Below, piece after piece: positions 4,400 to 34,324 of a stretch of DNA of 64,000 bases. The stretch comes from Octopus sinensis (taxonomy: Eukaryota): assembly GCF_006345805.1 (NCBI RefSeq), contig NC_043014.1, positions 16,368,001 through 16,432,000 of the forward strand. Reading direction: 5' to 3'. Each line of letters starts with the position of its first letter. Position 1 is the first letter of the stretch. The position numbers and the translations under genes were made by a program. The notes under the pieces were generated by a model. That model saw only the letters and a program-made list of their open reading frames with translations. It ran no database searches and was not told the origin of the DNA.

Positions 4400-4723
4400 A
4401 TATCATCATCATCATCATCATTTAGCGTCCGTTTTCCATGCTAGCATGGGTTGGACGGTTCAACTGGGGTCTGGGGAGCCCGAAGGCTGCACCAGGCCAG
4501 TCAGATCTGGCAGTGTTTCTACAGCTGGATGCCCTTCCTAACGCCAACCACTCCGAGAGTGTAGTGGGTGATTTTATGTGCCACCGACACAGGTGCCAGA
4601 CGAGGCTGGCGAACGGCCACGCTCGGATGGTGTTTTTATGTGCCACCGACACAGGTGCCAGACGAGGCTGGCAGACGGCCACGCTCGGATGGTGTTTTTA
4701 TGTGCCACCGACACAGGTGCCAG
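4400..4723 (-). mobile_element. 5'-truncated RTE 3' tail with 62-bp tandem repeat (~2.4 units, 4576-4723)
   Basis: (CAT)n tail; atgtgccaccgacacaggtgccaga recurs at 4576, 4638 and 4700. Confidence 0.85.
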
Positions 4724-4747
4724 ATATATATATATATCTATATCTAT

Positions 4748-9155: not shown

Positions 9156-11130
9156 TGACTGCGTTGAAGATCGTGTGGCACCAGACATCAAGGTTCGCAG
9201 CCAAGTCTGACCAGCATTGGTGGTTAATATGACATGCTGTTAGAGACTTCTTGAGGCAGTCTTTGTAGCGCTTCCTCAGAGCTTCTCTCACACGGTGGCC
9301 GATGGAGAGTTCGCCAAACTGGGCAATCTTAGGAAGGCAATGGTTCTCCATTCTGAAGACATGCCCTGCCCATCGGAGGTGAGACTTCAGTAGCATGGCT
9401 TCAATGCTGGGGATCTCGGCCCGCTCCAAGACTTCAATGTTTGTGACGAAATCACTCCAGTGAATGTTGAGGATGGTGCGGAGACATCGTTGGTGGAAGC
9501 GCTCGAGGAGACGGATGTGACTGCGGTAAGTAATCCAGGTCTCCAAGTCATAGAGAAGAGTGGCGGGAACCACGGCCCTGCTGACACTGATCTTTGTTTT
9601 GTTCTTCAAGTTATCATTGTGCCAAACACGTTTGTACAATCTGCCAAAGGACCTATTTGCCTTAGAGAGTCTATTTTCAATTTCTTTGTCGATCCTTGCA
9701 TCGAATGAGATGATGCAGCCCAGGTATGTAAACTGCTGAGTTGAGTTCAGTTTGGTACCACATATAGTGATGTGGGGTGGGCGGTAATCCTCTTGGGGTG
9801 TAGGTTGGTGAAGTACCTCCGTCTTTTTGAGTCTAACTGCCAGGCCAAAGAGCCGTGAGGCGTCTGCAAGGCAGGACGTGATGGCGACAAGGACAGCGTC
9901 GTCTGTGAAGAGAAGGTCTTGGATCAGCCTCTCCTGGGTCTTGGTGTGGGCTTGGAGGCGCCATAGATTGAAGAGGCTGCTATCCAGACGATACCTAACA
10001 CACCCCATCCTCATCCTCCATTTCTTCAGTTGCATGCTTGATCATGCTGAAGAAGATGCTGAAGAGATTCGGTGCCAGGACACAACCCTGCTTCATGCCG
10101 TTGGAGATGGGGAAGGGCTCCGACAGGTCACCATTGAGTCTTATCTGACCACGCTGATTCTCGTGCAGCTAGATCACCATCTGTAGAAACTTGGTGGGAC
10201 AGCCAAGTCGTTCCAGGATGAGCCATAGTCCTGTCCTGCTCACTGTGTCAAATGCTTTTGTGAGGTCGACTAAAGCAGCATAGAGTCCCCTGTTTTGTTC
10301 TCGACATTTCTTCTGGAGTTGGCGGAGGACGAACACCATATCCGTTGTGCCTCTGTTAGCTCTGAGGCCACACTGGCTCTTGGGGAGGTTTTCTTCAGCA
10401 ATGGTTGGTACTAGCCTATTGAGCAGGATCCTGGCAAGTACTTTGCCGGCGATGGAGAGTAGGGTGATTCCCCGGTAGTTGAAGCTGTCAGACTTTTCAC
10501 CCTTGTTCTTGTACAGGGTTATGATGATGGTGTCGTGAAGATCCTGTGGCAGCTTGCTCTGCTCCCAGCAGCAGACAAGAAAATCATGGAGCATTGGACC
10601 TCCATTCTTCCAGATTTCTGGTGGGATGCCGTCAACTCCTGCTGCTTTGCGACTCTTGAGTTTTCCTATGGCTTCAATCGTTTCTTCGAGGGTGGGTGGT
10701 TTGTTGAGCTCCTCTTTGAGTGGAAGTTGAGGAATGCGAAGGATGGCAGCGTCCTGTATGGTACGGTTACCACTGAAGAGGCTTTGGAAGTGCTCGGACC
10801 AGCGAGCGAGGATGGAGGTGTTATCGGTGAGGTCCTGTCCATCTGAACTGTGCAGGGGACTCTGGACCAGGTAGGTGGGGCCAGACACTGCTTTCAGAGC
10901 CTCATAAAAGCCTCTATAGTCTCTGAGGTTCTCCATGCCAGGTGGTTCCACCACACGTTCTGCATTTCTCTGAGTTTTCGCTGTAGGGTGCTGCATGCGC
11001 GTCGAAAGGTAGTTTTCTTTACAGGACAGGCTGGTTGTGCGAGGTGGGCCTAATGAGCTGCCCTCTTCCTTGCTAGTAATTCCTGGATCTCCTTGTCATT
11101 TTCATCAAACCAGAAGCTGAGGACTACTGA
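9135..11130 (-). mobile_element. Degenerate, truncated RTE-clade (BovB-like) LINE reverse transcriptase
   Basis: ORFs 10996-10169 and 10035-9079 carry KAAGVDGIPPE, NYRGITLLS, QCGLRANRGTTDMVF, DLTKAFD, KQGCVLAP and LLFTDD, with in-frame stops and a frameshift between them. Confidence 0.93.
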
Positions 11131-11345: not shown

Positions 11346-11974
11346 TCTCATATGCCAAGCTGTTGACATGGTCAATCCCTTCTATGGTTTGTGTTTTACA
11401 TGCCAAGTACCGAAGTTCTTGGGGAAAAATGCATCTTCGTAATTTATACACTACAAATGATCATGTTATACAAATCTTCAAGACCTTAAGGTTTAAAGAT
11501 GATGAACAAAACAAGATACTCTCTTTCACAACCTTGCTACCAAGCAGGTGGCCAGTTTGTCAGGAGTCTGTGAGGGGCTCCACACTAAAAGTGGATGGAA
11601 TTATGAAGAGCTTTATTTAACAAAAGTAAATAAAAGAATAACAATATGTTTTATAAGCTATCCACAGTCCAATACAAATAGTTAGAATTGCTTTTCATTA
11701 ACCTGGGGAATTGATTGTTCCTCTTTCCAAATATTTAGCACTGTCAGGTGCGACATACTAAACTACCCCAAACTTTTTTTAAATATAAAATAGCTGGAGA
11801 TGGGGGCCATATGTTTTTAAAACTGAACATTCAAACCATCTTTGCTATAGTACATTTGTTGAAAAAATTAAGAATAATAATGATAATAGAAATAATACAA
11901 ATGATGTTAATAAATGCATGATGACTTAACACCAGAATACCTGGACAAGTCTTTATGTTACCTTTATTTTTCTG

Positions 11975-12601
11975 TTATTGGAGCCTATTATGAACATTAC
12001 TGATGTTTCTCAGTTTGGAAACTGATTTATATACATCCTGCAGACATGGCACTGCATCTGGTATATTCCAAAAATCACTAATTGTCACAAGGAATGGGTT
12101 TTTCCAATATGACTTCAAAATGGAACCAAAATATTTGGATGCATGAACTCAATGGTTTTGGCAATTTTGTTTGATGCCTAACATTTCTGACAATACACCA
12201 ATCCAAACATCATCTGGCATGAGCATTTTGTTCTTCAATGATGCCAGATAGAGTTTGTTGATTACATTAATATGTGCTATGTAACCAACACCATGACAAT
12301 ATATAGGATAGTCTCCCCTTGATACAACATTTCCTCACTGAGTTCATGGAATTTTTTGTTTTTGTGATGGTCTGATTTTCTTCCAGGAAAGCAATTACAA
12401 AATGCAAAATGATTATCATAATCAACTTGAGACAAATCATAATGAAGAAGTGGCAGAAGTTTGATCTGGTCAACAAAAAGTTCATCATTTAATACCATAA
12501 CATATTCCACATTGGCACAAAACTCCACACTCTACTTCCATGCCATAAGTGTCTTTAAGTAGACATTACCATAAGAATGTTGGAGGGAGTCTAAGAAATG
12601 T
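11975..12601 (-). pseudogene. Beta-1,3-galactosyltransferase-like (GT31/Galactosyl_T) catalytic exon, disrupted
   Basis: Manual translation after acceptor cttacctacag (12602): HFLDSLQHSYGNVYLKTLMAWK*SVEFCANVEYVMVLNDELFVD...YQGE, frameshift at ~12310-12320, then DYPIYCHGVGYIAHINVINKLYLASLKNKMLMPDDVWIGVLSEMLGIK..NH*VHAS...RLQ*. This matches the GT31 motifs NLTLKT..KW...C.....K.DDDVFV and YP.YC.G.GY...EDV..G. Confidence 0.85.
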
Positions 12602-13219
12602 CTGTAGGTAAGACTTTATATGAAGGGTGTATAATTTTTTGGGTGGTGGTAATAATAATAATCATAATACCACCTTGGGGTCCTTTCGATTAGTACTGAG
12701 GAGAGGGGATGAAGGATGAAGACTGATAAGTTTTTTGAGGGGATGGGTAGGGATTCCTTCTATTTTGTTATACAACCTTTTCATCTTTTTTTACAAAATA
12801 TATATGTATGCATATAAAAGAGGGGAAGGGAAACGGGAATGAGCGGGGTTATTCATTTTTCTTTTCTTTCTTTTTTTTTTTTTAATATTTTTAAATATTC
12901 ATTTCAGTTCACAGTTCTCTACAACTAGACCAAAAAACAAAAGTGAAAAATCACTCACACATATTACAGAATGGAGTTGGACAAGTGATGTGTAGTTAGA
13001 AGAATGCTTTTTCTCACCCAGAGTTTTACACCAAATCCAGTTCCATCGAACTAATATTCATAGATCTGCTCTTGCTCCCACCCCTGCATTACATTACCCC
13101 CACCAATGTTAAGGCTTTCTTGTTAATGTCATTGTTGTTGTGGTGTGGTAAATGGTTCAATAGACCCTCTCACCCTAACGTGTTTATGTTAAGATCTTTT
13201 CTTCAAAGATTCTCAAAGT

Positions 13220-14223
13220 TCAGAGTCCGTACTTCAGCCTCCAAGTTTCTCTGTTGGAAACTAACAAAATCTCTGCCCTGCTCCCCACCTCTCCTTTCCA
13301 CTTCTTCCTCCTCCTCATCCTCCTCCACCTCCTCATCGCCATCATCACTCGACGTCTTGCCTTCGAATGATGTGAGAGAACATGGCGTTGGTGGCATGGC
13401 AGAGAGTCGACTTTACCGACGATAGCCTCCAAGTTTCTCTGTTGGAAAGTTACAAAATCTCTGCCCTGCTCCCCACCTCTCCTTTCCACTTCTTCCTCCT
13501 CCTCCTCATCGGCATCATCACTCGACGTGTTGCCTTCGAACGATGTGAGAGAACATGGCGTTGGTGGCATGGCAGAGAGTCGACTTTGCCGACGATGACG
13601 GGCATTGCAACTGCTGCTGTTGTTTCGTGCCTCACCACTTCTACGGCACTGTTTGGCCGACACTACTGCACCTGTATCCAGTGACCCGTCAGATGCTGAT
13701 GATGTCGAAGAGGAAGGAGAAGGGTAACTACTAGTACTCAAGTTTGTTGTTGACACTTCTGTTTCTGAACTTGTTGCCCGACCTTCGTCAAGGCTTGTGT
13801 TTTTCTTCTTGCGGGTTATCCGGTAGTCTTTTGAATCTTTCCCTTCCTTGTGCAGGATCTGAGTTAGCTTTCGACGACGTGCGTTGGTGAACCCATCCTC
13901 AGAGGCAATCACACTTTTTTCTCGGGGTGTTGCTGCTACTGCTGCTGTAGATTTTGCAGAAGGCACTACACGGGAGGCAATGACAGAATTCATCGGATTT
14001 TCAACAACAGGTTGAAGCAGTGAGAGCTTGGCAAAGGGCTTGACCTGCCGAGAAAATGGAGTGCTACAGATCTGATCTGGCAGTAGCAAGGTCTCCTCTT
14101 TTATAGCAACAGACTTCAGTGGTAAGTTCACATGGTGGTGGTCGTGATGTTGGTGATGATGGCTGTTATATGTGGAATATGTTGTTAATGGATCTACACT
14201 GGGCTCTGCTTTGATCTTGGTTA
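13220..14223 (-). CDS. TGIF-like terminal exon copy B: homeodomain deleted, C-terminal region retained (may be a pseudo-exon)
   Basis: Acceptor ttttcag| at 14224, phase 1; open to the stop at 13220. About 97% identical to copy A but reads VIAS-ED-G-FTNARRRK in place of the homeodomain. The C-terminus has MPPTP, an acidic tract and QGRDFV(S/T)FQ, reminiscent of the TGIF C-terminal PPPTPP/QDFSGFQ. Confidence 0.55.
13236..13596. repeat. Tandem duplication within exon B (units 13236-13423, 188 bp; 13424-13596, 173 bp)
   Basis: agcctccaagtttctctgttggaaa...gccgacgat occurs twice, back to back. Confidence 0.95.
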
Positions 14224-14862
14224 CTGAAAAAGAAAAAAGAAAATGAAAAAATATTAATGTGGATCAATACAAAGAAAATAAATTTAAGTAATACTTTATC
14301 AAATAAAGAAAGACGAAAAGCTTAACTTCTTTCATTACCAACCTCCTTGAGTCTGCTCTTTCTTCTGCAATACTATCCTTCTGTTTTATCAAAATTCACA
14401 TTAATTTATGTTCTAAGAACTAACTAGATTCTTTAATAATTTCAAAATTAATTGAACTGAATGCAGTGTATATCAATAGAAATAAGGTAATGAAAGGATT
14501 CAGTCAACACTGGTACGTAACTAAATACCTCTAAGTATAGGTCACATACACTTGTCAAATCAAAGCAAATATGTAAATTAGTTGACCTGTCCTGCATCTA
14601 TGCTATGGGTCATTCAGCATTAACAATGAGAATGTGGGGTTTAAAAACAAAGCTAACAGCTCAGGCTCCAAGTAAAGAAATAATTTCTAACACAGCTTTT
14701 TAAGCTGGAGGAGTCAATTTCTTAGACTAGTCATTATTCTAGTCCCCTCTTAGAAGAATAAAAGCTAAAGTCAACCCTGAGGGAGTTTGAACTCAAAATG
14801 TAAAATGGGTAAGGCACAATTTCTGAAGACCTACCAGGTACCTAACTTCCTTATCATAATAA
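13715..14862. repeat. Segmental duplication copy B (13715-14528 = 15159-16128; 14526-14862 = 21056-21377)
   Basis: Direct sequence identity. The ~4.9-kb segment 16129-21055 is missing from this copy, joined at a 3-bp tac microhomology. Confidence 0.92.
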
Positions 14863-15140
14863 TAGTAATCACAACACCAACCTATTATAGGCACAAGGCC
14901 TGAAAGTTGGTGGGAGGGAATGGTCAATTACACTGATCCTGGCACTTATTTCTATCAACTCAAAGAATGAAAGGCCAAGTCAACCTTGGCAGAATTTGAA
15001 TGCAGAACACAATGATGGATGAAATGCTGCTGAGTATTTTGTTCAAAGTACTAATGATTCTGCCGCTCACAGCCACAATTCCTTAAATAACCCTCTCTAC
15101 TACAGGCACAAGGTGTGAAATACGGAGGTAAGGGGAATAG

Positions 15141-15835
15141 TCAATCATATAAACTGGTAGGAGAAGGGTAACTGCTATTACTCAAGTTTGTTGTTGACAC
15201 TTCTGTTTCTGAACTTGTTGCCCGACCTTTGTCAAGGCTTGTGTTTTTCTTCTTGCGGCTTATCCGGTAGTCTTTTGAATCTTTCCCTTCCTTGTGCAGG
15301 ATCTGAGTTAGCTTTCGATGACGTGCGTTGACGAACCAGGCTGACACCTGTTTCTGCTTTATGTTCAGAATAGTCGCCATCTTCAGTATATCATCCTCAC
15401 TGGGATACGCATGGTAGCGGTTCGACTTGAGCCAATCAGTCATTACACGAACTGCCTTTTTTGGCAGATTTCCTTGATACTGTCGTTTGCACCTGACCTT
15501 AGAGGCAATCACATTTTTATCTCGGGGTGTTGCTGCTACTGCTGCTGTAGATTTTGCAGAAGGCACTACACGGGAGGCAATGACAGAATTCATCGGATTT
15601 TCAACAACAGTTTGAAGTGGTGAGAGCTTGGCAAAGGGCTTGACCTGCCGAGAAAATGGAGGGTCTATTGGAGTGCTACAGATCTGATCTGGAAGTAGCA
15701 AGGTCTCCTCTTTTATAGCAACAGACTTCAGTGGTAAGTTCACATGGTGGTGGTCGTGATGTTGGTGATGATGGCTGTTATATGTGGAATATGTTGTTAA
15801 TGGATCTACACTGGGCTCTGCTTTGATCTTGGTTA
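15141..15835 (-). CDS. TGIF: TGIF-like TALE homeobox terminal exon copy A (homeodomain ~15488-15300; C-terminus truncated)
   Basis: KRQYQGNLPKKAVRVMTDWLKSNRYHAYPSEDDILKMATILNIKQKQVSAWFVNARHRKL has the TALE three-residue extension with the TGIF-type AYP loop and GNLPK/DWL/WF.NAR. Acceptor ttttcag| at 15836. Homology to copy B ends at 15159, where SINE sequence supplies the stop. Orthology to TGIF is not proven. Confidence 0.8.
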
Positions 15836-18224
15836 CTGAAAAAGAAAAAATATTAATGAGGATCAATACAAAGAAAATAAATTTAAGTAATACTTTATCA
15901 AATAAAGAAAGACGAAAAGCTTAACTTCTTTTATTACCAACCTCCTTGAGACTGCTCTTTGTTCTGCAATTACTATCCTTCTGTTTTATCAAAATTCACA
16001 TTAATTTATGTTCTAAAAACTAACTGGATTCTTTATTAATTTCAAAATTAATTGAACTGAATGCAGTGTATATCAAAAGAAATATGGTAATGAAAAGATT
16101 AAGTCAACATTGGTACGTAACTAAATACTTGCAAGACAAATTTCATCCCAACACAATGTAAAAAGTAAGAACCTCTTTTGGTCATGAACGACCATGAGAT
16201 TGTACCTAGAAAGTTCCCCTGCAAGGCACAAATCTAGGCAAAGTTGTTTATGGAAGACCAGCATCCATTCACCGGGCCACCGATGTGCTCCAAGGGAAAG
16301 GCAAAGGTTGATACAGCTTGGCACCAGTAACATCACAACTCATTTCTACAGATGAGTGAACTGGAGAAATGTGAAATAGAGTGTCTGGCTCAAAAACATA
16401 TTCAACCCAGACAGGAAATCGAACTCACAAACTCATGATTGTGAGCCGAATGCTCTAACCACTGGACCATGCAAATTCATAGTAATAATTCCTGATATTA
16501 ACATTCGGGTACCTTCAGCATGAGCGTTCCAATGTCCTCTTTTCCAAGCATGCATGGGTCAAATGGAATTTGTTGACTTTCTACAGATGGCTGCCCATCC
16601 TGTTACTAACCTTCACTTGATTCCAAGCAAGATGTGTCTCACAAGAGAATGGAAATAAATAACACTGCCTGTATGTCAGTGATGCTCACAACCACCACGT
16701 GATGTCAAGAGATGGGCACATACATATATATTGAGCTTCTTTCTGTTTCCAACTACCAAATCAACTCAGAAGGCTTTGGTTGGCCAAGAGACCTGCCCAA
16801 GTACTGCACAGTGGGACTGAACCTTAAACCACACAGCTGGGAAGCTTGATATCTACAAAGCCCAAGTTGTAGAGCAGCATTATATCGTTTGATTAAATTA
16901 ATTCTAGTATATGATTAGTACTCATTTTATTGTCCCCAGAAGAATAAAAATTGAAGTTGATTTCTGTGAGATTTAAACCCAAAACCCTAGGCATTTTTTT
17001 TCATCAAGCCAAGCGAAATTGTAGTCATGGCCAATGCTGGTGTCATGTAAAAGCAGCCATTACACTCTTGGAGTGGTTGGCATTAGGAAGAGCATCCAGT
17101 CATAGAAACCATACCAAGTTAAACCGGAACCTGATGCAGCTCTCAAGCTTATCACTTCTAGTCACACCACCAAACCCATGCTAGCATGGAAAACGAACAT
17201 TAAATGATAATGATGATGACTACAAATTCAGCCATTTCCACAATTATATTAATTATAACATAGGCAGAAGACCACAGATGTAAGGAGAGGAAACTGACAA
17301 ATAGTTATCATCATCACCATTTTAACATCCATTTTGCATGCTTGTACAGGTCAAACAGAATTTGTTGAGGCAGATTTCTATGAACTTTACATTGCAACCC
17401 TCATCTGTTTCCAAGCTAATATTTCCTCAATGGACAAGCATGTTTTCCTAGAAGACTAAAAACAAAAGACACTACTTGTATGAAATGATGCTCAATTCAA
17501 ACTATCACATGATGTCAAGACAAGGAATCACAAACATACACAACCGTACATGTGCACACACACACGACCAGTTGCCATCTACCAAATCCATTCACAAGGC
17601 CTTGTGTGAGCTTGTAGCAGAGGACACTTGGCCAAAAGGAAGGGCTCTGTCAGAGGAGAAAAAAAACAGCGCATGATACTGTTTGGAATTTCTGTAAGTA
17701 GGAAGAGGAGGAAGAGAATTTGCCTTCAGATCAGAAACCTTGCTTACTTGTGACAGAATGGACTCTGCTAAAGGAACTGAAGGGATTAAAGACAAAACTG
17801 ACCTTGGTAGGATTTGAACTCTGAATGTAAAGAACCAGAACAATACCATAAAATATGCTATCTGACACTAATAAGTATGCCGTTTTGCCACCTTGATAAT
17901 AATTGGTTTTGAAGACCAGGAATTTAGAGGGGAGGTGGACTGATTAAATTGACACTTGTACTTGACTGGTACTTTATCGATCCTCGGAGGATAAAATACA
18001 AAGTTGACCATGGCAAAATTTAAACTCAAAAAAAAAAAAAAAAGAAAAAAAAATCCTATAAATACTGCAAGGCATTCTGTCTGATGATCTATCAAATTCT
18101 GCCAATCACTGTTTTTCAAAGCCATTTGATAAAAGTCCATTATTTTCGAAATTTTGAAACAAAAGGCAGCGTCAAAAGGATTTAGCGTGAATCACTATCT
18201 TCAATCACTATTTCATATATATAT

Positions 18225-18620
18225 ACTCTTTTACTTGTTTCAGTCATTTGACTGCGGCCATGCTGGAGCACCGCCTTTAGTCGAGCAAATTGACCCCGGG
18301 TCTTATTCTTTGTAAGCAAAGTACTTATTCTATCGGTCTCTTTTGCCGAACCGCTAGGTGACTGGGATGTAAACACACCAGCATGGGTTGTCAAGCAATG
18401 CTAGGGGGACAAACACAGACACTCAAAAACACACATATACATATATATATACATATATACGACAGGCTTGTTTCAGTTTCCATCTACCAAATCCACTCAC
18501 AAGGCATTGGTCGGCCCGGGGCTATAGCAAAAGACACTTGCCCAAGATGCCATGCAGTGGGACTGAACCCGGAACCATGTGGTGGGTTAGCAAGCTACTT
18601 ACCACACAGCCACTCCTGCG

Positions 18621-18625
<5 letters not shown>
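18225..18625 (-). mobile_element. Full-length CORE-type SINE
   Basis: Same head, CORE and tail as 3962-4392. Confidence 0.9.
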
Positions 18626-18663
<38 letters not shown>

Positions 18664-19781
18664 GGACTCTCTTGTCATTAGACAACGTATGAGTGTTTGG
18701 CAATTTCTTGCTGAAAAACCACACAGATCATTTGTTTGCAGTGATCAAATGTTTGTGTTCACATAACCTCACTCCCTCCATCAGATCAACATTACCTGTA
18801 CAGGTGCACCATGTGTCACATGTCAGATGGCGAAATGATCACAGAGCAACATGAAATGAAGTGCTCTGCTCAAGGAACACAATGCAACGTCCGGTCTTGG
18901 AATCAAAACCACCATCTTGCAATCGTGAGTGCAACACTGTAACCACTAAGTCATGCACCATCACGATATATATATATGTGTGTATATATATATGCACAGG
19001 CATGGTTGGGTGGTTGAGTAGCTTGCTTTCAATCCATGTGGGTTTGGGTTCATGTGGTACTTTGAGCAAGTGTCTTTAAACTACCCACTTGGCATGAACA
19101 ATGTTTGCTTGTCTACATCCCCCCGTAACTTAGCAGTTCAGCAAAAGAGTCAACAGAACAAGTACCAGACTCAGAAAAGAAAAAAAATTGTAATAAATAC
19201 TGGGTTGATTGATCTGTTTGAACTCTTGAAGGCAATACGCCAACACAGCTGCTGCAGTCCAATGAGTGATGTTAGCAAATGTGTGTGTGTGTGTGTATTG
19301 CTGTGAGGGTTTTGCATGTAAACAGATCCAACATATAAAAAGAAAAAAGCAGCCTCTCCATCACTTCACACATGACTGATTAGCACCAGCACCCCCACTA
19401 TACTCTGTAAAGTGGTTGGCATTAACAAGGGTTTCCAGTTGTAGAAACAATGCCAAAAATGTCATTGGAACTTGACATGGCCTTGCAGTTAGCCAATATC
19501 TGTGAAACCATCCTACCCATGCCAGTATGGTAAGTGAACATTAAATGATAATGCTGGACCCGATACTCTGCCTGGTCCAGGAATCAAACCTCTGACCACT
19601 AAATAATTCTACACTAAATAACACATGAATCTAGTGAATGAATGCATGCATGCATATATATATATATGAAAGCATTATTGTTGTTAAAAACAGCAATAAT
19701 GAGGTGGTTAGGAAGACTTCTACCTTAATAGGTGTAATATTAAATATATGAATAAAAGGGTAAAAATACTGCTTGACAAAG

Positions 19782-20123
19782 ATGAAAGCGAAAGCTTCAA
19801 AAACAACCAATCCTACGATTAAATACACACACGAGCAATGCAATGAACAACAGAGTGGGACGTTTAAAGTTCAAAACGCACACGAGTTGACGTAGTTAAT
19901 ATTTTGGAAATAGATGTTGCTATCTCCAACTGAAGATTGCAAAGCATGTTTTCTCATGAACAGCATGAAATCAATTGATATTGGGGTATGTAAACTACCT
20001 TCAAATTCCATCCTGAAGGTAAGCCTATTTTTTAAAGTGTTCATGATGATGATGATGATTCACTGCATTGCTCGTGTGTGTATTTATTGTAGGATTGGTG
20101 GTTTTTGAACCTTTCGCTTTCAT
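19782..20123. repeat. Inverted repeat, arms 19782-19847 and 20059-20123 (~92% identical)
   Basis: ttca(t/c)tgcattgctcgtgtgtgtattta..gtaggattgg..gtttttgaa.ctttcgctttcat occurs on opposite strands. Confidence 0.85.
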
Positions 20124-20198
20124 ATATATATGCTATGTTGGAAAAACATGTGAGCACAATTCAGCACAGGAATGATTGTTAAAAATATCGTCTCATAC

Positions 20199-20408
20199 CT
20201 TCCATAGTGTACTAGCAAATGCCAACCTTCAATTTACTCCCTTAGCAATAATCTGCCCCAGACTGCAAGATCAGGATCAACTGCAACAGTTTTTAGGGAA
20301 ACAGACTTCACACATCACAGACATGGAGTCTTGTCTTGGGAAGCAGTGATTCAGGATAACATTTTGCAAGCAAGACAAATTCTGACAATCAGAAAGCAGG
20401 CATCCGGC
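20199..20408 (-). CDS. Predicted start exon of the TGIF-like gene (5' UTR plus ATG GAA G; CDS 20205-20199)
   Basis: Acceptor ctctttag| at 20409. ATG in acactATGG context with an in-frame TAG 6 nt upstream. Strong donor AAG|GTATGA in phase 1, matching the acceptors at 15835 and 14223 and giving MEVTKIKAEP. Prediction only; a weaker alternative mini-exon (ATG GAA TTT GAA G|gtagtt) lies near 20012-20000. Confidence 0.55.
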
Positions 20409-20505
20409 CTAAAGAGCAGTAGCAGAATACATACTGATACAGTGTAGAGGAGGCGCTTCAGTTTTGCAATAAAAAAAAATAAAACTGAGTCGAATCAAAG
20501 AAAAC

Positions 20506-20544
<39 letters not shown>

Positions 20545-20820
20545 GCTAGCACCCCCTTGACTGGCTTCCATGCCGGTGGCACGTAAAAAGCTCCAACTGA
20601 TTATGGCCGATGCGAGACTCGCCTGGCACCTGTGCCGGTGGCATGTAAAAAGCATCCACTACACTCATGGAGTGGTTGGCGTTAGGAAAGGCATCTAGCT
20701 GTAGAAACACTGCCAGATCAGACTGGAGCCTGGTGCAGCCTCATAGCTTTCCAGACCCTGGTCGAACCGTCCAACCCATGCTAGCACAGAAAACGGACGT
20801 TAAACGATGATGATGATGAT
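20545..20820 (+). mobile_element. 5'-truncated RTE 3' tail
   Basis: gtgccggtggcacgtaaaaag...ggacgttaaacgatgatgatg. Confidence 0.85.
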
Positions 20821-20889
20821 ATATATACATACATACAACATATACAAAATCTGCTGAATCATCATTGTGTTGATGTAAAAATATTCAGT

Positions 20890-21145
20890 TGTCAAATCAA
20901 CAAATATGTAAATCAATTGACCTGACCTAAATCTAAGTGGACACTTGGATTGTCAAACCAATACCAATATATAAATTAGTTTGACCTGACCTACATCTAT
21001 GCTGTGGGTCATTCACAAGTGTCAAACCAACACCAATGTATTAGCTGACTTGGCCTACCTCTAAGTATAGGTCACATACACTTGTCAAATCAAAGCAAAT
21101 ATGTAAATTAGTTGACCTGTCCTGCATCTATGCTATGAGTCATTC
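20890..21145. repeat. Degenerate 4-unit minisatellite (61-69 bp), each unit starting TGTCAAA
   Basis: TGTCAA at 20890, 20951, 21020 and 21083, each followed by aatat.taaat..gttgacctg.cct..atcta-like sequence. Confidence 0.75.
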
Positions 21146-21384
21146 AGCATTAACAATGAGTAAGTGGGGTTTAACAACAAAGCTAACAGCTCAGGTTCCA
21201 AGTAAAGAAATAATTTCTAACACAGCTTATTAAGCTGGAGGAGTCAATTTCTTAGACTAGTCATTATTCTAGTCACCTCATAGAAGAATAAAGGCTAAAG
21301 TTTGAACTCAAAATGTAAAAGGGGTAAGGCACAATTTCTAAAGACCTACCAGGTACCTAACTTCCTTATCATAATAAAGCAAAG

Positions 21385-21900
21385 TCGACCTTGACGAGAC
21401 TTGAACTCAGAATGTAAAAATGGACGAAATATTGCTAAGCATTTTGTCACCTTAATAATAAAAATGATAAAAATTCTTTCTTGTGGAAGCACAAAGCCTC
21501 AAATTTGGAGGAAGGCATTAAGTTGATTACATCGACCCCAGGGCGTAACAGGTACTTATTTAATCGATCCTGAAAGGATGAAAGAAAGATGACTTTGGCG
21601 GAATTTGAACTCAGAAATGTAATGGCAAATGAAATACAGCTAAGCATTTCCTCCAGCACACTAATAATCCTGCCAGCTCACCACTTTAATCTTTTCTACT
21701 ATAGGCACAAGGCCTGAAATTTGGCAGGAAGGGGTTAGTCAATCAGTGCTTGACTGGCACTTGTCTCATCGACCCTGAAAGGATGAAAGGCAAAGTCAAG
21801 CTTGGTGGAATTCGAACTCAGAACACAATGGCAGACGAAATATGGCTACGCATTTCACCCGGCGTGCTAACGATTCTGCCAGCTTGTCATCTTAACGATG
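21385..21900 (-). mobile_element. tRNA-derived SINE cluster (second family)
   Basis: Reverse-complement copies of ggatgaaaggcaaagtc...gaatttgaactcagaa. Confidence 0.8.
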
Positions 21901-23686
21901 ATTTCTAAAATGTGTGCAATTCCATAATTTTCTGGCAGTGATTGCGGGTGGAGTGGTATGCTTGATTAAATCAACCTTGTGTTGTACTCATTTGGTGGGA
22001 CATATTTCCTCGACCTTTTGCCGACTTTGGCGAGAATTGAACCCAAAAATACAATCATTTTTGTTTACCACTTTGCCAATAAGTCAACTATTGGCCCAAT
22101 ATGAATAATGTGATTAATATGAGTAAAATAATAATTTCTTTCATCTTCCACACGGGTGGCGGCAAATAACTACGTAATTATATAATGCACTTCAATTAGT
22201 ATTTTCACGTCCAAAATTAAAGGAAAAAAAAAAACACGTCAGTTGTGCTACTGGGTTATATAATAAACATTATTATTCTATACGTGGGGGGTGGGTTGTC
22301 AGAACCGCTGGAGTGCCAGCCAGACAATATATTCACTATTTAGTTACACCCAGAGTTCAAAAATCCACACACACACACATAAACAGGTGATTCCAACCAG
22401 GGTCTGTGTGCATGAGCGTGTGTGTTGATGGGGGTATGACTGCCGATGGGTGGATTGATGGAATGTAAGGACTCTGCATTACCTTAAAAAAAAATTCCTG
22501 GGATATATAAAATAATTTAAATCGACTAAAAATCTTCCGAAACAGAGCTCCAGTATGGCCAGACGAGGCAACCATAGACAACAGAAGCAGGCGTGGCTGT
22601 GTGGTAAAAGCCTACTTCCAAACCACATGGTTCTGGGTTCGGTCCAACTGCGTGACACACCTTAAGGAAGTGCTTCTGTTAAAGCCCCGCCCGCCGACCA
22701 AAGCCTTGTGTGCGAATTGGTAGCTTGTGTAAATACATATACTCGTTAGTGTGTTTTATTTATATACAGTCACTCAGAAGCTCGGCAAAAAAGGAACTTA
22801 TAGGAAGATACTAGGTTTAGAAATAAGTGCCGGGGTCGATTTGTTCGACTAACCCTTCCAAGGAAGTGCCCCAGCATTTCCGCCAGTCGATTCATCCGTT
22901 CTCGGCAAACATTAAAAAGCATATAAATTTGAAAAACAAAACAAAAAAAAAAAAACACTTAAAAACCAATGCTTCAGAGAGAAAGTCACTAAAATACATG
23001 TGAAAACTTGTACAAATCATTATTAAAACATACAGGCTAAGAATTTTGAAATGCTTTTCGTTTAGGGATCTTTAGCCGCATGTTCTGGAACCAACTGTCG
23101 ATGAAAAGTGAGGCGTGCTCCTGTGTATGTGTAAGGATATATGTGTGCTTGCGTTCCGATGTTGTTTCCTTTACACATGGAAACGAAGCAGATGTGATAG
23201 TATAGTAATACACATCTCTTTGTCTCTTTTAAGTTTCAGTCACGAGATTCTGGTCACGATGAGGTACAACAATTAAAAATTTCACGGATCATAGCAATCC
23301 GAGTACTTATCGTTCCCTATTTGACGAACAGCAAAGTTACGAGACAAGTTAGCAGGTTAGAGAAGTTAGTGTGGGTGTAACCTGATGTCATAAGAATCTC
23401 TAAATTTCCGAAAGAACGTGAAGTCATTTTTGGGAACAGTGGATCTCGAAGCACTTAAGCTATAATCACATGCAAATATTGGGTTGAAAAACCCCCTTCG
23501 ATAGAAAAGGGTTGAAGGCTGCTGCGCTCTGAAATCCACAGTTCCAATATATACATATCCTACACATTTTTTTCCCTCCTCAATCTTTCTGTGTTTGACT
23601 TTACCATTCTTCTCGAGAGTCAAACTAAAACACCTACTTGTTCCCGTCACCTGTCTTCGCTTTTTGTCTTCTGTAAATAGGAACTA

Positions 23687-25991: not shown

Positions 25992-26776
25992 AACACAACA
26001 AACACTTATCTGCCGTTTTCTTTCGTTTTCAGGATGATAGGCCTGCAATCAGGTGGGGGTGGTAGGGTAGCAGAATCGTTAATGAAGATGAACAAAAAGA
26101 TTAGCAATATTCTTCCGGTTCTTTCCCTTCTCTGTTCAAATTCCGCCAAGTTAATTTTACCTTTCATCTTTTCGTGCTCGATAAAATAATTATCAGTTGA
26201 GCACTCGGGTTGATGTAATCAACCAACCTCTTTCCAGCAAAAGTACTGACCTTGTGCCAAAATTTGAAGATATTATTACATTTTAGCACATCTGACAAAA
26301 TGATTGATAATATTTTTTTTTTGTTATTTGCGTTTCGATTTCAAATGCCGCTTTCATAGTTTTGGGGCCGATAAATTAGTTCTAGCTGAGCACTGGAGTC
26401 GATGTCATCGACTTCACCCACCTAAAAAATTGCAGGCTTTGAGCCAAAATTAGAAAACAAAATAAAAAATTAGTAAGCTGTAATTTGAAAGACACTAACT
26501 GCAATTTCTGCATACGGAACATTCACATGCATTTTGCCATTAACCCCGTCAGGATTTAGAAATTTATAAAATATCGGTTATATGCTATATTCAGTTCAAA
26601 TGACAACTTCTGGATCTGTTCCAACTTTAGAATTAGTCGAGCACTAATGGAATCGTACTGATAGCTATTTAATTTCACTCACATTCCGAGTTTAAATACT
26701 GACGGCGCTGACATTGACTTTATATTCCTGTATTAGTAAAATGAATACCAGTCATATACTGGATTGATATTGCATA

Positions 26777-27599: not shown

Positions 27600-27730
27600 T
27601 GTATATATATAATATATATATGCGTATGGTGTGTGTATGTGTGCGGGTAAAATACATATGTAGTTATGTATGCATGTATGTAGATATTATATACATATAT
27701 AATATTATATATATAGATTATAACATATAT

Positions 27731-27762
<32 letters not shown>

Positions 27763-28074
27763 CATTATATATATATATAACAAATATATATATATTAACA
27801 TATATATATAGATACATAGCATATATATATACCTATATATTATATATATAGATATATATATATATATATATACATATATATACTATATATATTATTATAT
27901 ATTACAATATATATATATATATATATATATATACATTATTTATATTATTACATATTATATATATATACATACCTATATATATATACATATAATATATATA
28001 CTTATATATATATAACATATATATATATATATATATATACAATATATAATACATATATATATTATATACATATA

Positions 28075-28126
<52 letters not shown>

Positions 28127-28230
28127 TATATTAATATATAATTATATGTATATATATATATACATATAATATATACATATATATATACTATATACTATAT
28201 TATATATATATAATATATATATATTATATG

Positions 28231-28267
<37 letters not shown>

Positions 28268-28351
28268 GATACATATATATAATATATATATATAGATATA
28301 TTATATATATATATATCATATATAACATATATTATATATATATATCTATAT

Positions 28352-28405
<54 letters not shown>

Positions 28406-28506
28406 TATATATATATATATATATCTATATTATACATAATATATATCTATATATATATATATTGATATACATATATATATATAATATATATTATATTATA
28501 TATACA

Positions 28507-28537
<31 letters not shown>

Positions 28538-28607
28538 CAATATATATATATATATATATATCTATATATATATATATAGATATATATATATATATAATAT
28601 ACATATA

Positions 28608-28661
<54 letters not shown>

Positions 28662-28677
28662 CATATAGAATATATAC

Positions 28678-28708
<31 letters not shown>

Positions 28709-28830
28709 CATATATATATAATTATATCATATATATATATACTATAATATATATATATATATTATATATATATTACTATACATATATATAATATAGATAT
28801 ATATGTATAGATATATAGATAGATCATGTA
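27600..28830. repeat. Irregular ~1.2-kb (TA)n tract
   Basis: Directly visible; many single-base irregularities. Confidence 0.95.
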
Positions 28831-30660: not shown

Positions 30661-33600
30661 ATCATCATCATCATCATCATCATCGTTTAACGTCCGCTTT
30701 CCGCGCTAGCACGGGTTGGACGGTTCGACCGGGTCTGGGAAGCCAGGGGCCGCTCCAGGCTCCAGTCTGAATCTGGCAGAGTTTCTACGGCTGGATGCCC
30801 TTCCTAACGCCAACCACTCCGTGAGTGGATTGGGTGCTTTTTACGTGCCACCTGCACAGGGGCCGGAGGGTCCGGCATCGTCACGATCGGTTCGAGCATT
30901 TTAACGTGTCAGCGGCACGGGGGCAACGAGGTCCGGGGTACTTTGGGGATCGGGGTACTTTGGGAATCCAGGGTACTTTGGGGATCCGGGGTACTTAGAA
31001 TGGGTAGGGGTATGTGGAATTGCTGCAGAAAGCAGCCCGGGTCTTTGTAGTCACAGCATATCTCCAGAGATCTCGGTCCTTCGCCATTGCCTCAGTGAGG
31101 CCCAATGCTCTGAGGTCATGCTTGACCACCTCATCCCATGTCTTCCTGGGTCTACCTCTCCCCCTGATACCTTCAACTGTTTGGGAGTGGCACTTCTTCA
31201 CACATCTCTCTTCATCCATCCGCAGCACATGACCATACCATCGCAAGCGTCGCTCTTGCACACCACATCTGATGCTTCTTATATCCAGCATTTCTCTCAG
31301 GATACTTACACTCTGTTTGCGTGCACACTGACACTACACATCCAGCGGATCATGCTAGCTTCATTTCTTTCAAGTCTACGCATGTCTTCTGCAGTCACAG
31401 CCCATGTTTCATTACCGTGAAGCATGGCAGTTCGCACACATGCATCATACAATCTACCTTTTGCTCTGAGGGAGAGACCTTTTGTTGCCAGTAGGGGTAG
31501 GAGCTTTCTGAACTTTGCCCAGGCTATTCGTATTCTAGTGGTGATACTCTCTGTGCATCCACCTCCGCTACTAACTTGGTCACCCAGGTAGCGGAAACTA
31601 TCAACTACTTCTAGTTTCTCTCCCTGGAGTGTGATGGAATCTGTTTTCTGAGTGTCTGTTGTGTCTATTGTCCCTGTGCATCTGCCGCACATGAAAGCTA
31701 TCTTATCTGTTAATTTCCCTTTAATGTTGCTGCACACCTCTTATGTGTCCATAACTTACATTGGGTGCATCTTATGGAGTTTCTACCTGTACCTTTCCTA
31801 CAGGTTGAGCAGGGCCACCTACCCGAGGGGATGTGTGCTGAGTACCTCTTGCTGCTTACTAATACTTTGGTCTTTGCTACATTTATTCTAAGGCCCTTTG
31901 ATTCCAACCCTTGCTTCCACACCCGAAATTTCTCTTCTAGTTCCGGTAGTGATTCTGCTATGAGAGCTAGGTCATCGGCATAGAGGAGCTCCCAGGGGCA
32001 TCCCGTTTTGAATTCCTCTGTTATTGCCTGAAGGACTATGATGAATAAAAGGGGACTGAGGGCTGAGCCCTGGTGCACACCTACTTCTACCCGGAATTCT
32101 TCACTATATTCGTTGCCAATCCTAACCTTGCTGACAGCCTCTCTGTATAGAGCCTGTACAGCCCTTATTAGCCATTCTTCAATCTCCAGTTTCCGCATCG
32201 ACCACCAGATAAGGGAACGGGGAACCCTGTCAAAGGCTTTCTCCAAGTCTACAAAAGCTATGTAGAGGGGTTTATCTTTAGCTAGGTACTTCTCCTGCAG
32301 TTGTCGGACCAGGAATATAGCATCAGTGGTGCTTCTACCTGGTACAAAACCGAACTGCATTTCATCTAAACAAATTCTCTCCCTAATGAGATTGGTTATG
32401 ACCTTCTCTGAGACCTTCATCACCTGGTCCAACAGTTTGATATCTCTGTAGTTATTTCTATCTAGAGCATCACCCTTACCCTTGTAGCAGTTGACTATGG
32501 TGCTGCTGCACCAGTCATTGGGTATGACTCCATTGTGAACTACCTGGTTTACAATGCGGGTGACTATGGCATAGCCCACATAGCCAGCTGTTTTAAGCAT
32601 CTCAGCAGTGATTCCTGATAGGCCAGGGGCTTTGCCTGGTTTCATATCCTTAATTGCCTTATCTACAAGGGAGCTGTCTATTCGGGTAGCTGGTCCCTCT
32701 ACTGGGTCAACATTTGGCAGGCTCTCCTCCTCCCATTCATTCTCCTCATTCAGCAGTCTTTCATAATGGCTTCTCCAAGCCTCTTTCTTTTCACTAGTAG
32801 TAAAAGCAAGTGCCCCATCATCCATGCGGACACATTTCTCTCCTATAACATCGCTATTTTCTCTGACACACTGTCTGGCAATCCGAAATACTTCAGCTCT
32901 TTGATCCTCGCGACGCTGGACATTGGCAAACTTCTTCTTTTCTGCTACATCTTTGGCAATGTAGACCTGCCGCCCAGCCTCCCTTTTGGCTATCTGGTAC
33001 AGTTCCCTGCTGCCCCCATCCTTCCAGGCTTTCCAGGCCCGTCTCTTTTCACAGATGGCTTTATCTACTGCACTATTCCACCACCACGTAATTCTAGGTC
33101 TGGAAGGGACTTTGCACCATCCACAGACTTGGTCTGTGGCACTCAACAAGCTGTCCCGTAGGAATTCCCAGCTACCTTCTATGTCTGACGTCTGAAGCTC
33201 CTCCTCCCTCTCATCAAATTTCTTGATGAGTATGTCCCTAAATTTCTGACCATGCGAAGGGTTCTTTAGCCTCCAAATCCTTCTTTTCTGGATTGGTTTG
33301 TTTCTTGGAGTCCTTCTGGCCTCAAGCTTAAAGTCACTGATGATTAGTCTATGCTGAGGGATACATTCTTCACCCGGGAGGGTCTTTGTATTCAAGAGCA
33401 ACCCTGCATCCCGTTGTCTGGTGAGGATGAAGTCTATTTGGCTAGCGGAGTCTCCTGACTGATAAGTTATAAGGTGGCAGACTGGCTTCTTGAAGTTAGT
33501 GTTGCAGATTGAAAGGTTACATGCATCACAGAATTCCAGCAGTCTAGTTCCCTCATCATTTCTGGTGCCAATACCATAGCCACCATGTACCCCAGTGAAG

Positions 33601-34100: not shown

Positions 34101-34324
34101 CTGAGAAGAGGAGGGTTGTTGTGGTGGTGATAGTTTTCGTGGTATTTTTCTTTTGATATATATATATATATATATTATTATTATTATATATATATATTAT
34201 TATTATTATTATTATTATTAATAATAATAAGAAGAAGAAGAAGAAGGAGGGGGAGGAGGAGGAGAAGAAGAAGAAGAGAAGAAGAAGAAGAAGAAGAAGA
34301 AGCAGAAGAAGAAGAAGAAGAAGC

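What the first reader, a model, noticed from the sequence alone, without database searches (positions are those of the whole stretch)
13203..21377. A TGIF-like homeobox gene split into two complementary duplicated terminal exons
A DNA-level tandem duplication produced two copies of the main coding exon with identical phase-1 acceptors. Copy A has the intact TALE homeodomain but ends in SINE sequence before the C-terminal region (233 aa with the predicted start exon). Copy B has the C-terminal PPTP/acidic/DF..FQ region but no functional homeodomain (336 aa). Copy B also lost the 4.9 kb containing the start exon, so it can only be expressed by splicing from the shared upstream exon. Neither copy encodes the ancestral full protein. 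If both are used, one locus makes a DNA-binding-only isoform and a putative corepressor-tail-only isoform by alternative last-exon choice. My manual count between copies is ~10 nonsynonymous and ~3 synonymous changes, which does not show purifying selection, so decay of one or both copies is a real alternative.
Basis: partly seen in the sequence, partly recalled or inferred. Interest (0 to 1): 0.85.

Follow-up and report, generated by a model that had tools for sequence, protein, structure and literature searches.

The report
Decaying partial copies of octopus TGIF gene
The two complementary half-exons are real, but they are young, unstable partial copies of an intact TGIF-type homeobox gene on another chromosome, they evolve as if unconstrained, and existing gene models join them in series, not as alternative ends.

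Summary
Observation confirmed; interpretation partly supported. The window is Octopus sinensis chromosome scaffold C18. Copy A (15141-15835, minus strand) keeps a TALE homeodomain and is cut off at 15159, running into an old SINE-like repeat. Copy B (13220-14223, minus strand) lacks the homeodomain and keeps the tail. Both have identical phase-1 acceptors.

Five things change the picture.
- An intact parent gene lies on C8. It is conserved to Argonauta, with 31 synonymous and 0 non-synonymous homeodomain differences.
- The C18 locus copies only about 10 kb of the parent: part of intron 1, the main exon and the 3' flank. It lacks the parent's start exon.
- The A/B pair sits in a ~83 kb tandem segmental duplication. 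O. vulgaris has the same arrangement in at least 5 units, so it is not a mis-assembly.
- RefSeq XP_036366639.1 maps exactly to the window and splices A into B through a donor inside A. That gives one protein, not two alternative last exons.

Across 9 A and 9 B copies, omega is about 0.6-0.9 and not distinguishable from neutral. Several sister copies carry stops or frameshifts, and B's tail is frameshifted by a 188-nt duplication. Most likely this is a pseudogene or proto-gene cluster. Transcript evidence could not be tested here.

The parts
12575..13202 (-). 3' flank of copy B. It is homologous to the 3' flank of the C8 parent gene. 12575 is the downstream limit of the C8-derived segment.
   Evidence: blastn to L002 and L030, 94%; 4.3% mismatches.
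13203..13235 (-). Ancestral C-terminal codons EVRTLNFENL plus the stop. They are out of frame in B's genomic ORF. The RefSeq model uses them as its last coding piece.
13236..13423 (-). Second copy of the 173-188 nt tandem duplication in B's tail. It shifts the frame. RefSeq treats it as a 188-nt intron, and only a GC-AG placement is possible.
   Evidence: families D7 and D10; shared by all B copies in both species.
13220..14223 (-). Copy B exon. It has the N-terminal region, the 12-bp IDPP loss, the 156-bp homeodomain loss, the TGIF-type post-homeodomain stretch, the Ser-rich region and the acidic tail. It then continues through about 62 out-of-frame codons to its stop.
14224..14535 (-). Intron remnant ('i300') upstream of B. 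It is homologous to 15836-16135 and includes the polypyrimidine tract and acceptor AG.
   Evidence: 5.0% mismatches versus A's copy.
14526..14862 (-). Segment P, a duplicate of P' (21056-21377). It is former parent intron-1 DNA.
14863..15155 (-). Segment F, an old SINE-like interspersed repeat that lay in the parent's intron 1. It forms the duplication junction and supplies A's last 5 codons and stop.
   Evidence: 4 locus-specific copies at 95-100%, and thousands at about 70-79%.
15141..15835 (-). Copy A exon. It has the N-terminal region, the TALE homeodomain (15309-15494) and the post-homeodomain stretch. It is truncated at 15159. Cryptic donors lie inside it, with GT at 15226-15225 and at 15181-15180.
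15836..21055 (-). Intron remnant upstream of A, made of i300 plus the 4.9 kb that is absent from B's copy. All of it is homologous to the parent's intron 1.
21056..22888 (-). Segments P' and R. 22888 is the upstream limit of homology to the parent's intron 1. Segment F, which lies between P' and R in O. vulgaris, in U2 and in the parent, is missing here.
26500..26532 (-). Counterpart of the first coding exon used by two O. vulgaris models (MHVNVPYARNG). In the window a 1-bp deletion changes the phase, so splicing into A would read TAA at once.

Best explanation
The locus is one unit of a young, tandemly amplified cluster of partial DNA-level copies of an intact octopod TGIF-class gene. The parent gene lies on another chromosome (C8).

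Shown:
- About 10 kb of the parent was copied to C18: 8.3 kb of intron 1, the main exon and the 3' flank. The parent's start exon was not copied.
- A ~6.5 kb tandem duplication followed. Its breakpoints lie inside the exon (15159) and just upstream of the SINE-like repeat F, at the F/R boundary. It produced a truncated upstream copy (A) and a full downstream copy (B).
- B then lost 4.9 kb of former intron, 12 bp, and the homeodomain. It gained a frameshifting 188-nt tail duplication.
- The whole ~83 kb region was amplified. Recombination between the repeats removed A from units U2 and U3, and multiplied A in O. vulgaris.

Inferred:
- The copies evolve without detectable constraint, so they are most likely pseudogenes, possibly transcribed, or at best a proto-gene.
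- If the locus is transcribed, A is spliced into B in series, as the annotated models have it. The two do not act as alternative terminal exons.
For: Parent gene:
- It is intact and constrained. Octopus versus Argonauta gives 31 synonymous and 0 non-synonymous homeodomain differences, with overall omega 0.11.
- Homology between the parent locus and C18 covers L030 28216-38244 only. The parent's start exon lies 18 kb beyond that limit and is absent from 224 kb of C18.

Duplication history:
- The O. vulgaris locus is colinear with the window at 97.4% over 4.9 kb, and it keeps F at both positions. This fits a simple tandem duplication.
- All 10 truncated copies share one breakpoint.
- All B copies share the homeodomain loss and the tail duplication.
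- U2 and U3 are single recombination products that lack A.

Selection:
- A copies: 20 synonymous and 49 non-synonymous changes, omega 0.74-0.92.
- A homeodomain: 7 synonymous and 15 non-synonymous, including W48C, a stop, and loss of Arg residues in the N-terminal arm.
- B copies: 16 synonymous and 30 non-synonymous, omega 0.58-0.73.
- None of these differs significantly from neutral.
- Window versus O. vulgaris divergence is 2.8% for the A exon, 1.2% for the B exon and 1.7% for non-coding flanks.

Lesions and starts:
- 2 of 9 A copies and about 5 of 10 B-type copies carry further stops or frameshifts.
- There is no conserved start. Each model uses a different first exon, and the window's version has a 1-bp deletion.
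Against: - In the window both ORFs are open (230 and 333 codons). The A-to-B spliced frame is open for 537 codons.
- A post-hoc subset of four B copies gives 12 synonymous and 10 non-synonymous changes, omega about 0.3, P 0.002-0.01.
- All A copies share a C>A change that brings the internal donor closer to consensus (GTACTA to GTAATA).
- Two annotation pipelines call protein-coding genes here. One of them used Iso-Seq.
- The copies are young (1-5% divergence), so the omega tests have little power. An omega of about 0.5 cannot be excluded.
Confidence: 0.6

Rival explanations
1. Functional composite gene by serial splicing. The transcript enters A at 15835 and leaves through a donor inside A (GT at 15181-15180 or 15226-15225). 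It then enters B at 14223. One protein carries A's altered TGIF-type homeodomain, a repeated N-terminal segment and B's tail. On this reading the complementary losses in A and B are harmless, because splicing reunites the two halves. O. vulgaris relatives with 2-3 A exons would make multi-homeodomain proteins.
For: - RefSeq XP_036366639.1 (414 aa) maps 100% to the window with exactly this A>B junction.
- O. vulgaris models P0004, P0005, P0124 and P0125 chain A-type and B-type exons through the same two donors.
- That annotation was built on an independent ONT assembly with Iso-Seq and RNA-seq evidence.
- Both donors are in phase with the acceptor, and the frame is open for 537 codons.
- The GTAATA donor is invariant in all 10 truncated copies.
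- B copies show omega of about 0.6, and about 0.3 in a post-hoc subset.
Against: - A copies, including the homeodomain, evolve at omega 0.74-0.92. They carry changes at DNA-contact positions 5, 47, 50 and 54. One copy has lost W48 and another has a stop.
- There is no conserved start exon. The window's copy of the O. vulgaris start exon is frameshifted, so RefSeq has to start at an internal Met.
- The ancestral C-terminus is reached only through a weak GC-AG 'intron' that equals one repeat unit. This may be an artefact of homology-guided modelling.
- A was lost from U2 and U3.
- Gene models are predictions, and transcript support was not seen here.
Confidence: 0.27
2. A and B are alternative terminal exons fed by one shared upstream exon. 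One isoform would be DNA-binding only (233 aa) and the other corepressor-tail only (336 aa).
For: - A and B have identical phase-1 acceptors.
- A's ORF ends in F, and an ATTAAA lies downstream at 14437, before B's acceptor.
- Homeodomain-less isoforms are known for other TALE genes. This rests on established knowledge (homothorax/Meis) and was not tested here.
Against: - The proposed shared start exon is not conserved. It reads GTG in U2, in O. vulgaris and in the parent's intron.
- The alternative O. vulgaris-type start exon is out of phase in the window.
- No annotated model in either species ends in A.
- B's tail is frameshifted after NLEA.
- There is no detectable purifying selection.
Confidence: 0.06
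3. Assembly artefact. A and B would be haplotypes, or copies from different units, wrongly joined in tandem.
For: - The O. sinensis assembly is fragmented (13,516 scaffolds) and the region is a ~83 kb tandem repeat with an assembly gap nearby.
- O. sinensis shows one A exon, against at least 9 in O. vulgaris.
- F is missing between P' and R only in the window.
Against: - The independent ONT-based O. vulgaris assembly has the same T-B-i300-P-F-A arrangement. It is colinear over 4.9 kb at 97.4%.
- O. vulgaris repeats that arrangement in five units.
- A and B differ by 3.4-5.5% and by large indels. That is far above the 1.06% between the two species.
Confidence: 0.02

Closest known systems
TGIF family of TALE homeobox genes (TGIF1/TGIF2), here the octopod parent gene on C8 (RefSeq XP_029640185.1, labelled 'PKNOX1'; O. 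vulgaris CAI9726559.1; Argonauta hians ortholog)
   Same: - The homeodomain and the stretch that follows it align without gaps to human TGIF1 (PDB 6fqp) at E 8e-25.
- Other TALE families score far lower: PKNOX1 1.6e-12, MEIS 5e-9, PBX 7e-8.
- A and B derive from this gene's main exon and still carry its acceptor and intron DNA.
   Different: - The window's copies lack the parent's start exon.
- A has substitutions at homeodomain positions 5, 47, 50 and 54 and has no tail.
- B has no homeodomain and its tail is frameshifted.
Lineage-specific TGIF duplicates with fast-evolving homeodomains (mammalian TGIF2LX/TGIF2LY)
   Same: Both are recent extra copies of a TGIF-class gene whose homeodomain changes quickly, while the parent stays constrained. 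The mammalian side of this comparison rests on my own knowledge and was not tested here.
   Different: The mammalian copies are intronless retrogenes with complete ORFs. The octopus copies are DNA-level duplicates that retain 8.3 kb of intron, are fragmentary, and are amplified inside a segmental duplication.
Duplicated (non-processed) pseudogenes in segmental duplications
   Same: - The copy is partial and lacks the promoter and first exon.
- Omega is near 1.
- Truncation, deletion, frameshifts and stops are spread across the copies.
- Copy number changes through unequal recombination.
- The surroundings are rich in LINEs and SINEs.
   Different: In the window both ORFs are still open. Two annotation pipelines call spliced coding models that reunite the two halves.
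Non-canonical spiralian TALE genes, some with multiple homeodomains (SPILE/TALE-I..XIX; PMC6118893)
   Same: Both involve lineage-specific expansion of TALE genes in a mollusc. O. vulgaris models carry 2-3 homeodomains that arose by tandem exon duplication.
   Different: The SPILE clades are old, shared across phyla and used in development. This cluster is only about 3.5-5 times older than the 2.5-My O. sinensis/O. vulgaris split, derives from a TGIF-class gene, and shows no constraint.

Membership tests
TGIF family (TALE class) | Homeodomain with the three-residue loop extension (Pfam Homeobox_KN) | tested here: met
   A exon: E 2.7e-12. RefSeq model P0128: E 2.4e-12. Copy B: no hit, so this is met for A and the parent only.
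TGIF family (TALE class) | Closer to TGIF than to other TALE families, including the conserved stretch after the homeodomain | tested here: met
   The parent matches TGIF1 at E 8e-25, PKNOX1 at 1.6e-12, MEIS at 5e-9 and PBX at 7e-8. The alignment runs through ...LHKEGKDSKDYRITRKK. A scores 74-91 bits against animal TGIFs, while the parent scores 96-107 bits.
TGIF family (TALE class) | Conserved DNA-contact residues (Arg5, Asn47, Ile50, Asn51, Arg54) | tested here: not met
   The parent is identical to TGIF1 at these positions. The window's A exon has R5Q, N47A, I50V and R54H, and only N51, W48 and F49 are kept. B lacks the domain.
TGIF family (TALE class) | Corepressor-binding regions (CtBP motif PLDLS, Sin3/HDAC-binding C-terminal domain) | not tested
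   I made no motif or interaction test. By eye there is no PLDLS in the translations. The C-terminal block FVTFQQ.NLEA.VRTL is conserved from Octopus to Argonauta, but its partners are unknown.
Processed retrocopy (as TGIF2LX/LY) | Intronless copy without flanking intron homology | tested here: not met
   The C18 copies keep the acceptor and 8.3 kb of the parent's intron 1.
Gene with alternative last exons | A conserved shared upstream exon in phase with both acceptors | tested here: not met
The O. vulgaris-type first exon is out of phase in the window.
Gene with alternative last exons | Transcripts that end after the first terminal exon | not testable with these tools
   There is only a single ATTAAA, at 14437. 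No RNA data were available.
Tandem exon duplication read in series | A donor inside the upstream copy, in phase with the downstream acceptor, giving an open frame | tested here: met
   Both donors (GT at 15181-15180 and at 15226-15225) are phase 1. The frame stays open for 537 codons through the second, and P0128 maps at 100% through the first. That first donor (GT at 15181-15180; GTAATA) is invariant in 10 copies.
Duplicated pseudogene | Loss of purifying selection relative to the parent | tested here: met
   Parent omega is 0.11, with 0 non-synonymous homeodomain changes. A copies give 0.74-0.92 and B copies 0.58-0.73, neither significantly below 1. Power is low.
Duplicated pseudogene | Disabling lesions | tested here: inconclusive
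   In the window, A is truncated, and B has lost the homeodomain and has a frameshifted tail. Neither has an internal stop. Sister copies carry stops and frameshifts.

The most novel reading that the evidence does not exclude
A gene caught in the act of being born by exon-level complementary degeneration. After a tandem duplication that cut through the exon, the upstream copy kept only the homeodomain and the downstream copy kept only the tail. A cryptic donor, strengthened by an A-specific C>A change, now splices the two together. The result would be a new TGIF-derived regulator with an altered recognition helix. In O. vulgaris, where the A exon has multiplied, the products would carry 2-3 homeodomains. 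That would be a live example of how multi-homeodomain TALE genes of spiralians arise.
Probability: 0.2. Interest if true: 0.6.

Novelty: new member of a known kind. Interest (0 to 1): 0.3.

Why it matters
As found, this corrects an annotation more than it reveals a new mechanism.
- The window's RefSeq model is named 'transcriptional regulator GZF3-like', and the true parent is named 'PKNOX1'. Both are TGIF-class.
- The C18 models are probably built on decaying partial duplicates.

The locus is still a clean, datable case. Its events span roughly 3.5-5 times the 2.5-My O. sinensis/O. vulgaris divergence. In order they are: partial gene duplication, an intra-exon tandem duplication, complementary losses, and rapid copy turnover by unequal recombination.

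If transcripts and translation were shown, it would become a useful example of new-gene origin and of how homeodomain number grows in TALE genes.

Tried and rejected
- The first protein search with the whole parent exon timed out. Restricting the query to residues 60-230 worked.
I read the parent's context from the O. vulgaris ortholog locus L030 instead.
- One alignment used wrong coordinates for unit U2 (third row). That row is meaningless. U2's first exon was read instead.
- The region boundaries put the homeodomain 15 nt off. I therefore quote only whole-exon sums from that call.
- I considered that B's homeodomain loss might be an excised intron. The junction sequence does not fit a GT-AG removal, so I rejected this.
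- I considered that the copies are retrocopies. Intron DNA is retained, so I rejected this.
- I considered that P is an independent SINE insertion rather than duplicated DNA. P, F and R are contiguous in the parent's intron and in O. vulgaris, so I rejected this.
- The subset test that gave omega about 0.3 for four B copies was chosen after seeing which frames were open. With all nine copies it is not significant.
- The exact look-up of the RefSeq protein in public assemblies found nothing.
- The literature searches found no paper on this locus.
- I built no phylogenetic tree. The shared breakpoints and deletions already fix single origins, and mosaic copies show gene conversion that would blur a tree (A1_Ovul_32, A_Ovul_34a/b, Bp_Ovul_34).


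Full report
**What is in the window**

On the minus strand there are two copies of one large coding exon, 1.6 kb apart, with identical polypyrimidine tracts and AG|TA acceptors.

- Copy A starts at 15835. It has a Pfam Homeobox_KN domain (E 2.7e-12) at 15309-15494. It loses homology to its relatives at 15159 and stops five codons later at 15141-15143, inside segment F (14863-15155).
- F is an old SINE-like interspersed repeat. It has four locus-specific copies at 95-100% identity and thousands of candidates at about 70-79%.
- Copy B starts at 14223. It lacks 12 bp (IDPP) and a net 156 bp that held the homeodomain, and it continues into the Ser-rich and acidic tail.
I find 230 and 333 codons from the acceptors, and 9 non-synonymous and 4 synonymous differences.
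It shifts the frame after FQQRNLEA, so the ancestral end EVRTLNFENL (13206-13235) is out of frame.

**Where it comes from**

The genome has 2,719,151,902 bases in 13,516 scaffolds. This matches the O. sinensis assembly described in PMC10700109. Named RefSeq proteins of O. sinensis also sit on scaffolds of exactly these lengths.

A search of the whole genome with copy A found several relatives:
- An intact relative on C8:50.758 Mb, with a 353-codon open exon holding both homeodomain and tail.
- Three more homeodomain-less copies: C18:16.464 Mb, C18:16.550 Mb and the unplaced scaffold C11067.
- A second, more distant TGIF-class locus at C8:86.52 Mb.

The C8 gene is annotated in O. sinensis as XP_029640185.1, misnamed PKNOX1, and in O. 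vulgaris. It has an ortholog in Argonauta hians. All three share the start exon MDKDEQSAI..IPCQ, the homeodomain and the C-terminal block.

Between Octopus and Argonauta the homeodomain has 31 synonymous and 0 non-synonymous differences, and the whole exon gives omega about 0.11. The closest solved structure is human TGIF1 (E 8e-25), far ahead of PKNOX1, MEIS and PBX. The match runs into the TGIF-specific stretch after the homeodomain. So the parent is a constrained TGIF-class gene, and it is not split.

**How the C18 locus was built**

The O. vulgaris parent locus (L030) is homologous to the window only from 22888 down to 12575. That is 8.3 kb of the parent's intron 1, the main exon and 0.6 kb of 3' flank. 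The parent's start exon lies 18 kb beyond the limit of homology and is not found in 224 kb of C18. Segments R, F, P, the '4.9 kb' and i300 are therefore all former intron 1.

The O. vulgaris locus L029 is colinear with window 11442-16349 in one block at 97.4%. Upstream it has P'-F'-R. The arrangement there is tail-B-i300-P-F-A-i300-4.9 kb-P'-F'-R. A simple tandem duplication of about 6.5 kb, with one breakpoint in the exon and the other just upstream of F (at the F/R boundary), gives exactly this arrangement, once 4.9 kb is then lost from the downstream copy. The window has additionally lost F' at 21377.

All ten truncated copies in both species share the breakpoint. All B copies share the homeodomain loss and the tail duplication. 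Each of these events therefore happened once.

**The wider cluster**

The window is unit U1 of a ~83 kb tandem segmental duplication. Units U1, U2 and part of U3 are 94-98% identical, and there is an assembly gap in U3.
- U2 has one B-type exon joined to A-type upstream DNA. This is the product of recombination between the two i300 repeats.
- U3 has B-i300-P-F-R. This is the product of recombination between P-F and P'-F'.
- Both events removed A.
- O. vulgaris has at least five units on OX597833.1 (22.80-23.22 Mb), carrying A+B, A+A+B or A+A+A+B'+B. Mosaic copies show gene conversion.

The surroundings are LINE fragments and a galactosyltransferase fragment.

Mismatch-only divergences are as follows:

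| Comparison | Divergence |
|---|---|
| O. sinensis vs O. vulgaris, at the parent locus | 1.06% |
| U1 vs U2 | 1.8% |
| Window vs L029, non-coding | 1.7% |
| C8 vs C18 | 3.6-4.3% |
| A vs B | 3.4-5.5% |

With the 2.5-My species split quoted in PMC10700109, the cluster would be roughly 8-13 My old. That is an inference from a rough clock.

**The proposed start exon**

The ATG is a private G>A change in former intron DNA.

Two O. vulgaris models start with MHVNVPYARNG. The window's counterpart of that exon (26500-26532) has a 1-bp deletion that changes the phase, so splicing into A would read TAA at once. Other O. vulgaris models each use a different first exon, and the RefSeq models start at an internal Met. 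No conserved start exists for the C18 copies.

**How the exons are joined in existing models**

RefSeq XP_036366639.1 (414 aa, named 'transcriptional regulator GZF3-like') maps at 100% to the window in three pieces:
- 15593-15182, with donor GT at 15181-15180
- 14223-13424
- 13235-13203

It therefore splices A into B. It also removes one tail repeat as a 188-nt intron, for which only a weak GC-AG placement exists.

O. vulgaris models use the same donor, or a second one (GT at 15226-15225 in the window). These models were built on an independent ONT assembly with Iso-Seq, RNA-seq, protein and ab initio evidence. They chain up to three A exons and a B exon. In the window the A>B frame is open for 537 codons.

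All A copies carry GTAATA at the first donor, where the parent and B have GTACTA. None of the models ends in A. I could not inspect reads, so these remain predictions.

**Selection**

I counted each variant once, against the consensus of 9 A copies and of 9 B copies.

| Set | Synonymous | Non-synonymous | Omega |
|---|---|---|---|
| A copies, whole exon | 20 | 49 | 0.74-0.92 |
| A homeodomain | 7 | 15 (plus two double changes) | about 0.7 |
| B copies | 16 | 30 | 0.58-0.73 |

- None of these is significantly below 1.
- The A homeodomain changes include W48C, a stop, and repeated CpG-type losses of Arg residues in the N-terminal arm.
- Against the parent, the A homeodomain has 8-13 non-synonymous and 0-1 synonymous differences. 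These include N47A, I50V or I50A, and R54H, shared by all A copies, plus R5Q in the window.
- A subset of four B copies gave omega about 0.3. It was picked after the fact, and the signal fades with all copies.
- Between the window and O. vulgaris the A exon (2.8%) does not evolve more slowly than the flanks (1.7%). The B exon is at 1.2%.
- Two of nine A copies and about half of the B-type copies carry extra stops or frameshifts.

The copies are young, so mild constraint cannot be excluded.

**Verdict**

The structure is real. It is not an assembly artefact, and it is older than the split of the two species. It is not a split of the organism's TGIF gene. It is a partial, amplified and unstable duplicate of an intact parent.

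The second reading is a young composite gene read in series (0.27). The two-isoform model is unlikely (0.06). Assembly error is very unlikely (0.02).

The decisive test is uniquely mapped transcript and translation evidence, which these tools cannot supply.

Noticed in passing
window 12149-12334 (-), with 12277-12531 (-): A fragment of a beta-1,3-galactosyltransferase (Pfam Galactosyl_T, E 2.5e-7). It lies just outside the limit of homology to the C8 parent (12575). An O. vulgaris model (P0127, 333 aa) fuses a B-type exon to the equivalent fragment. This may mark the site on C18 where the C8-derived segment landed.
   Followed up: partly
window 31710-34196 (-); also 10169-11095 (-) and 57757-58734 (-): LINE-type ORFs. 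The first is an 828-codon open frame with endonuclease and reverse-transcriptase domains. The other two are reverse-transcriptase fragments.
   Followed up: partly
window 5697-64000 and beyond, to C18:16.565 Mb (L013-L028): The whole window belongs to a ~83 kb tandem segmental duplication with units 94-98% identical. A 100-N assembly gap lies at C18:16558418-16558517, inside the third unit.
   Followed up: yes
window 34174-34922, and L029 237-6942: A ~0.7 kb stretch is single-copy in the window. In the colinear O. vulgaris locus it forms about nine tandem copies with a period of about 750 bp.
   Followed up: no
window 27684-28821: A 1.1 kb (AT)n tract, which also shows up as inverted self-matches.
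   Followed up: no
window 42761-43143 and 4567-4724: Tandem arrays of a 67-nt unit (5.7 copies) and a 62-nt unit (2.5 copies). The two consensus units look like reverse complements of each other, so they probably belong to one repeat family.
   Followed up: no
L034 28977-46008 (O. vulgaris OX597833.1, 22.80-22.85 Mb): Three A-type exons lie 6.4 kb apart and still carry the 4.9 kb segment. A chimeric homeodomain-less truncated exon and a B exon follow. The annotated protein P0125 (763 aa) has three homeodomains.
   Followed up: partly
G000 C8:86521461-86521757 (L012): A second TGIF-class locus with a 327-codon open frame. It is 38% identical to copy A and shares the post-homeodomain ..DYRITRRR stretch. 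Its similarity to animal TGIFs is about the same as the parent's.
   Followed up: partly
whole genome versus O. vulgaris loci L029, L031, L032, L034, L035: O. sinensis shows a single A-type exon, while O. vulgaris shows at least nine. Either turnover has been very fast over 2.5 My, or repeats were collapsed in the O. sinensis assembly.
   Followed up: no
RefSeq and ENA names for the proteins: The product names mislead. The TGIF-class parent is called 'PKNOX1' in O. sinensis and Argonauta, and 'GZF3-like' in O. vulgaris. The window's model is also called 'GZF3-like'.
   Followed up: yes
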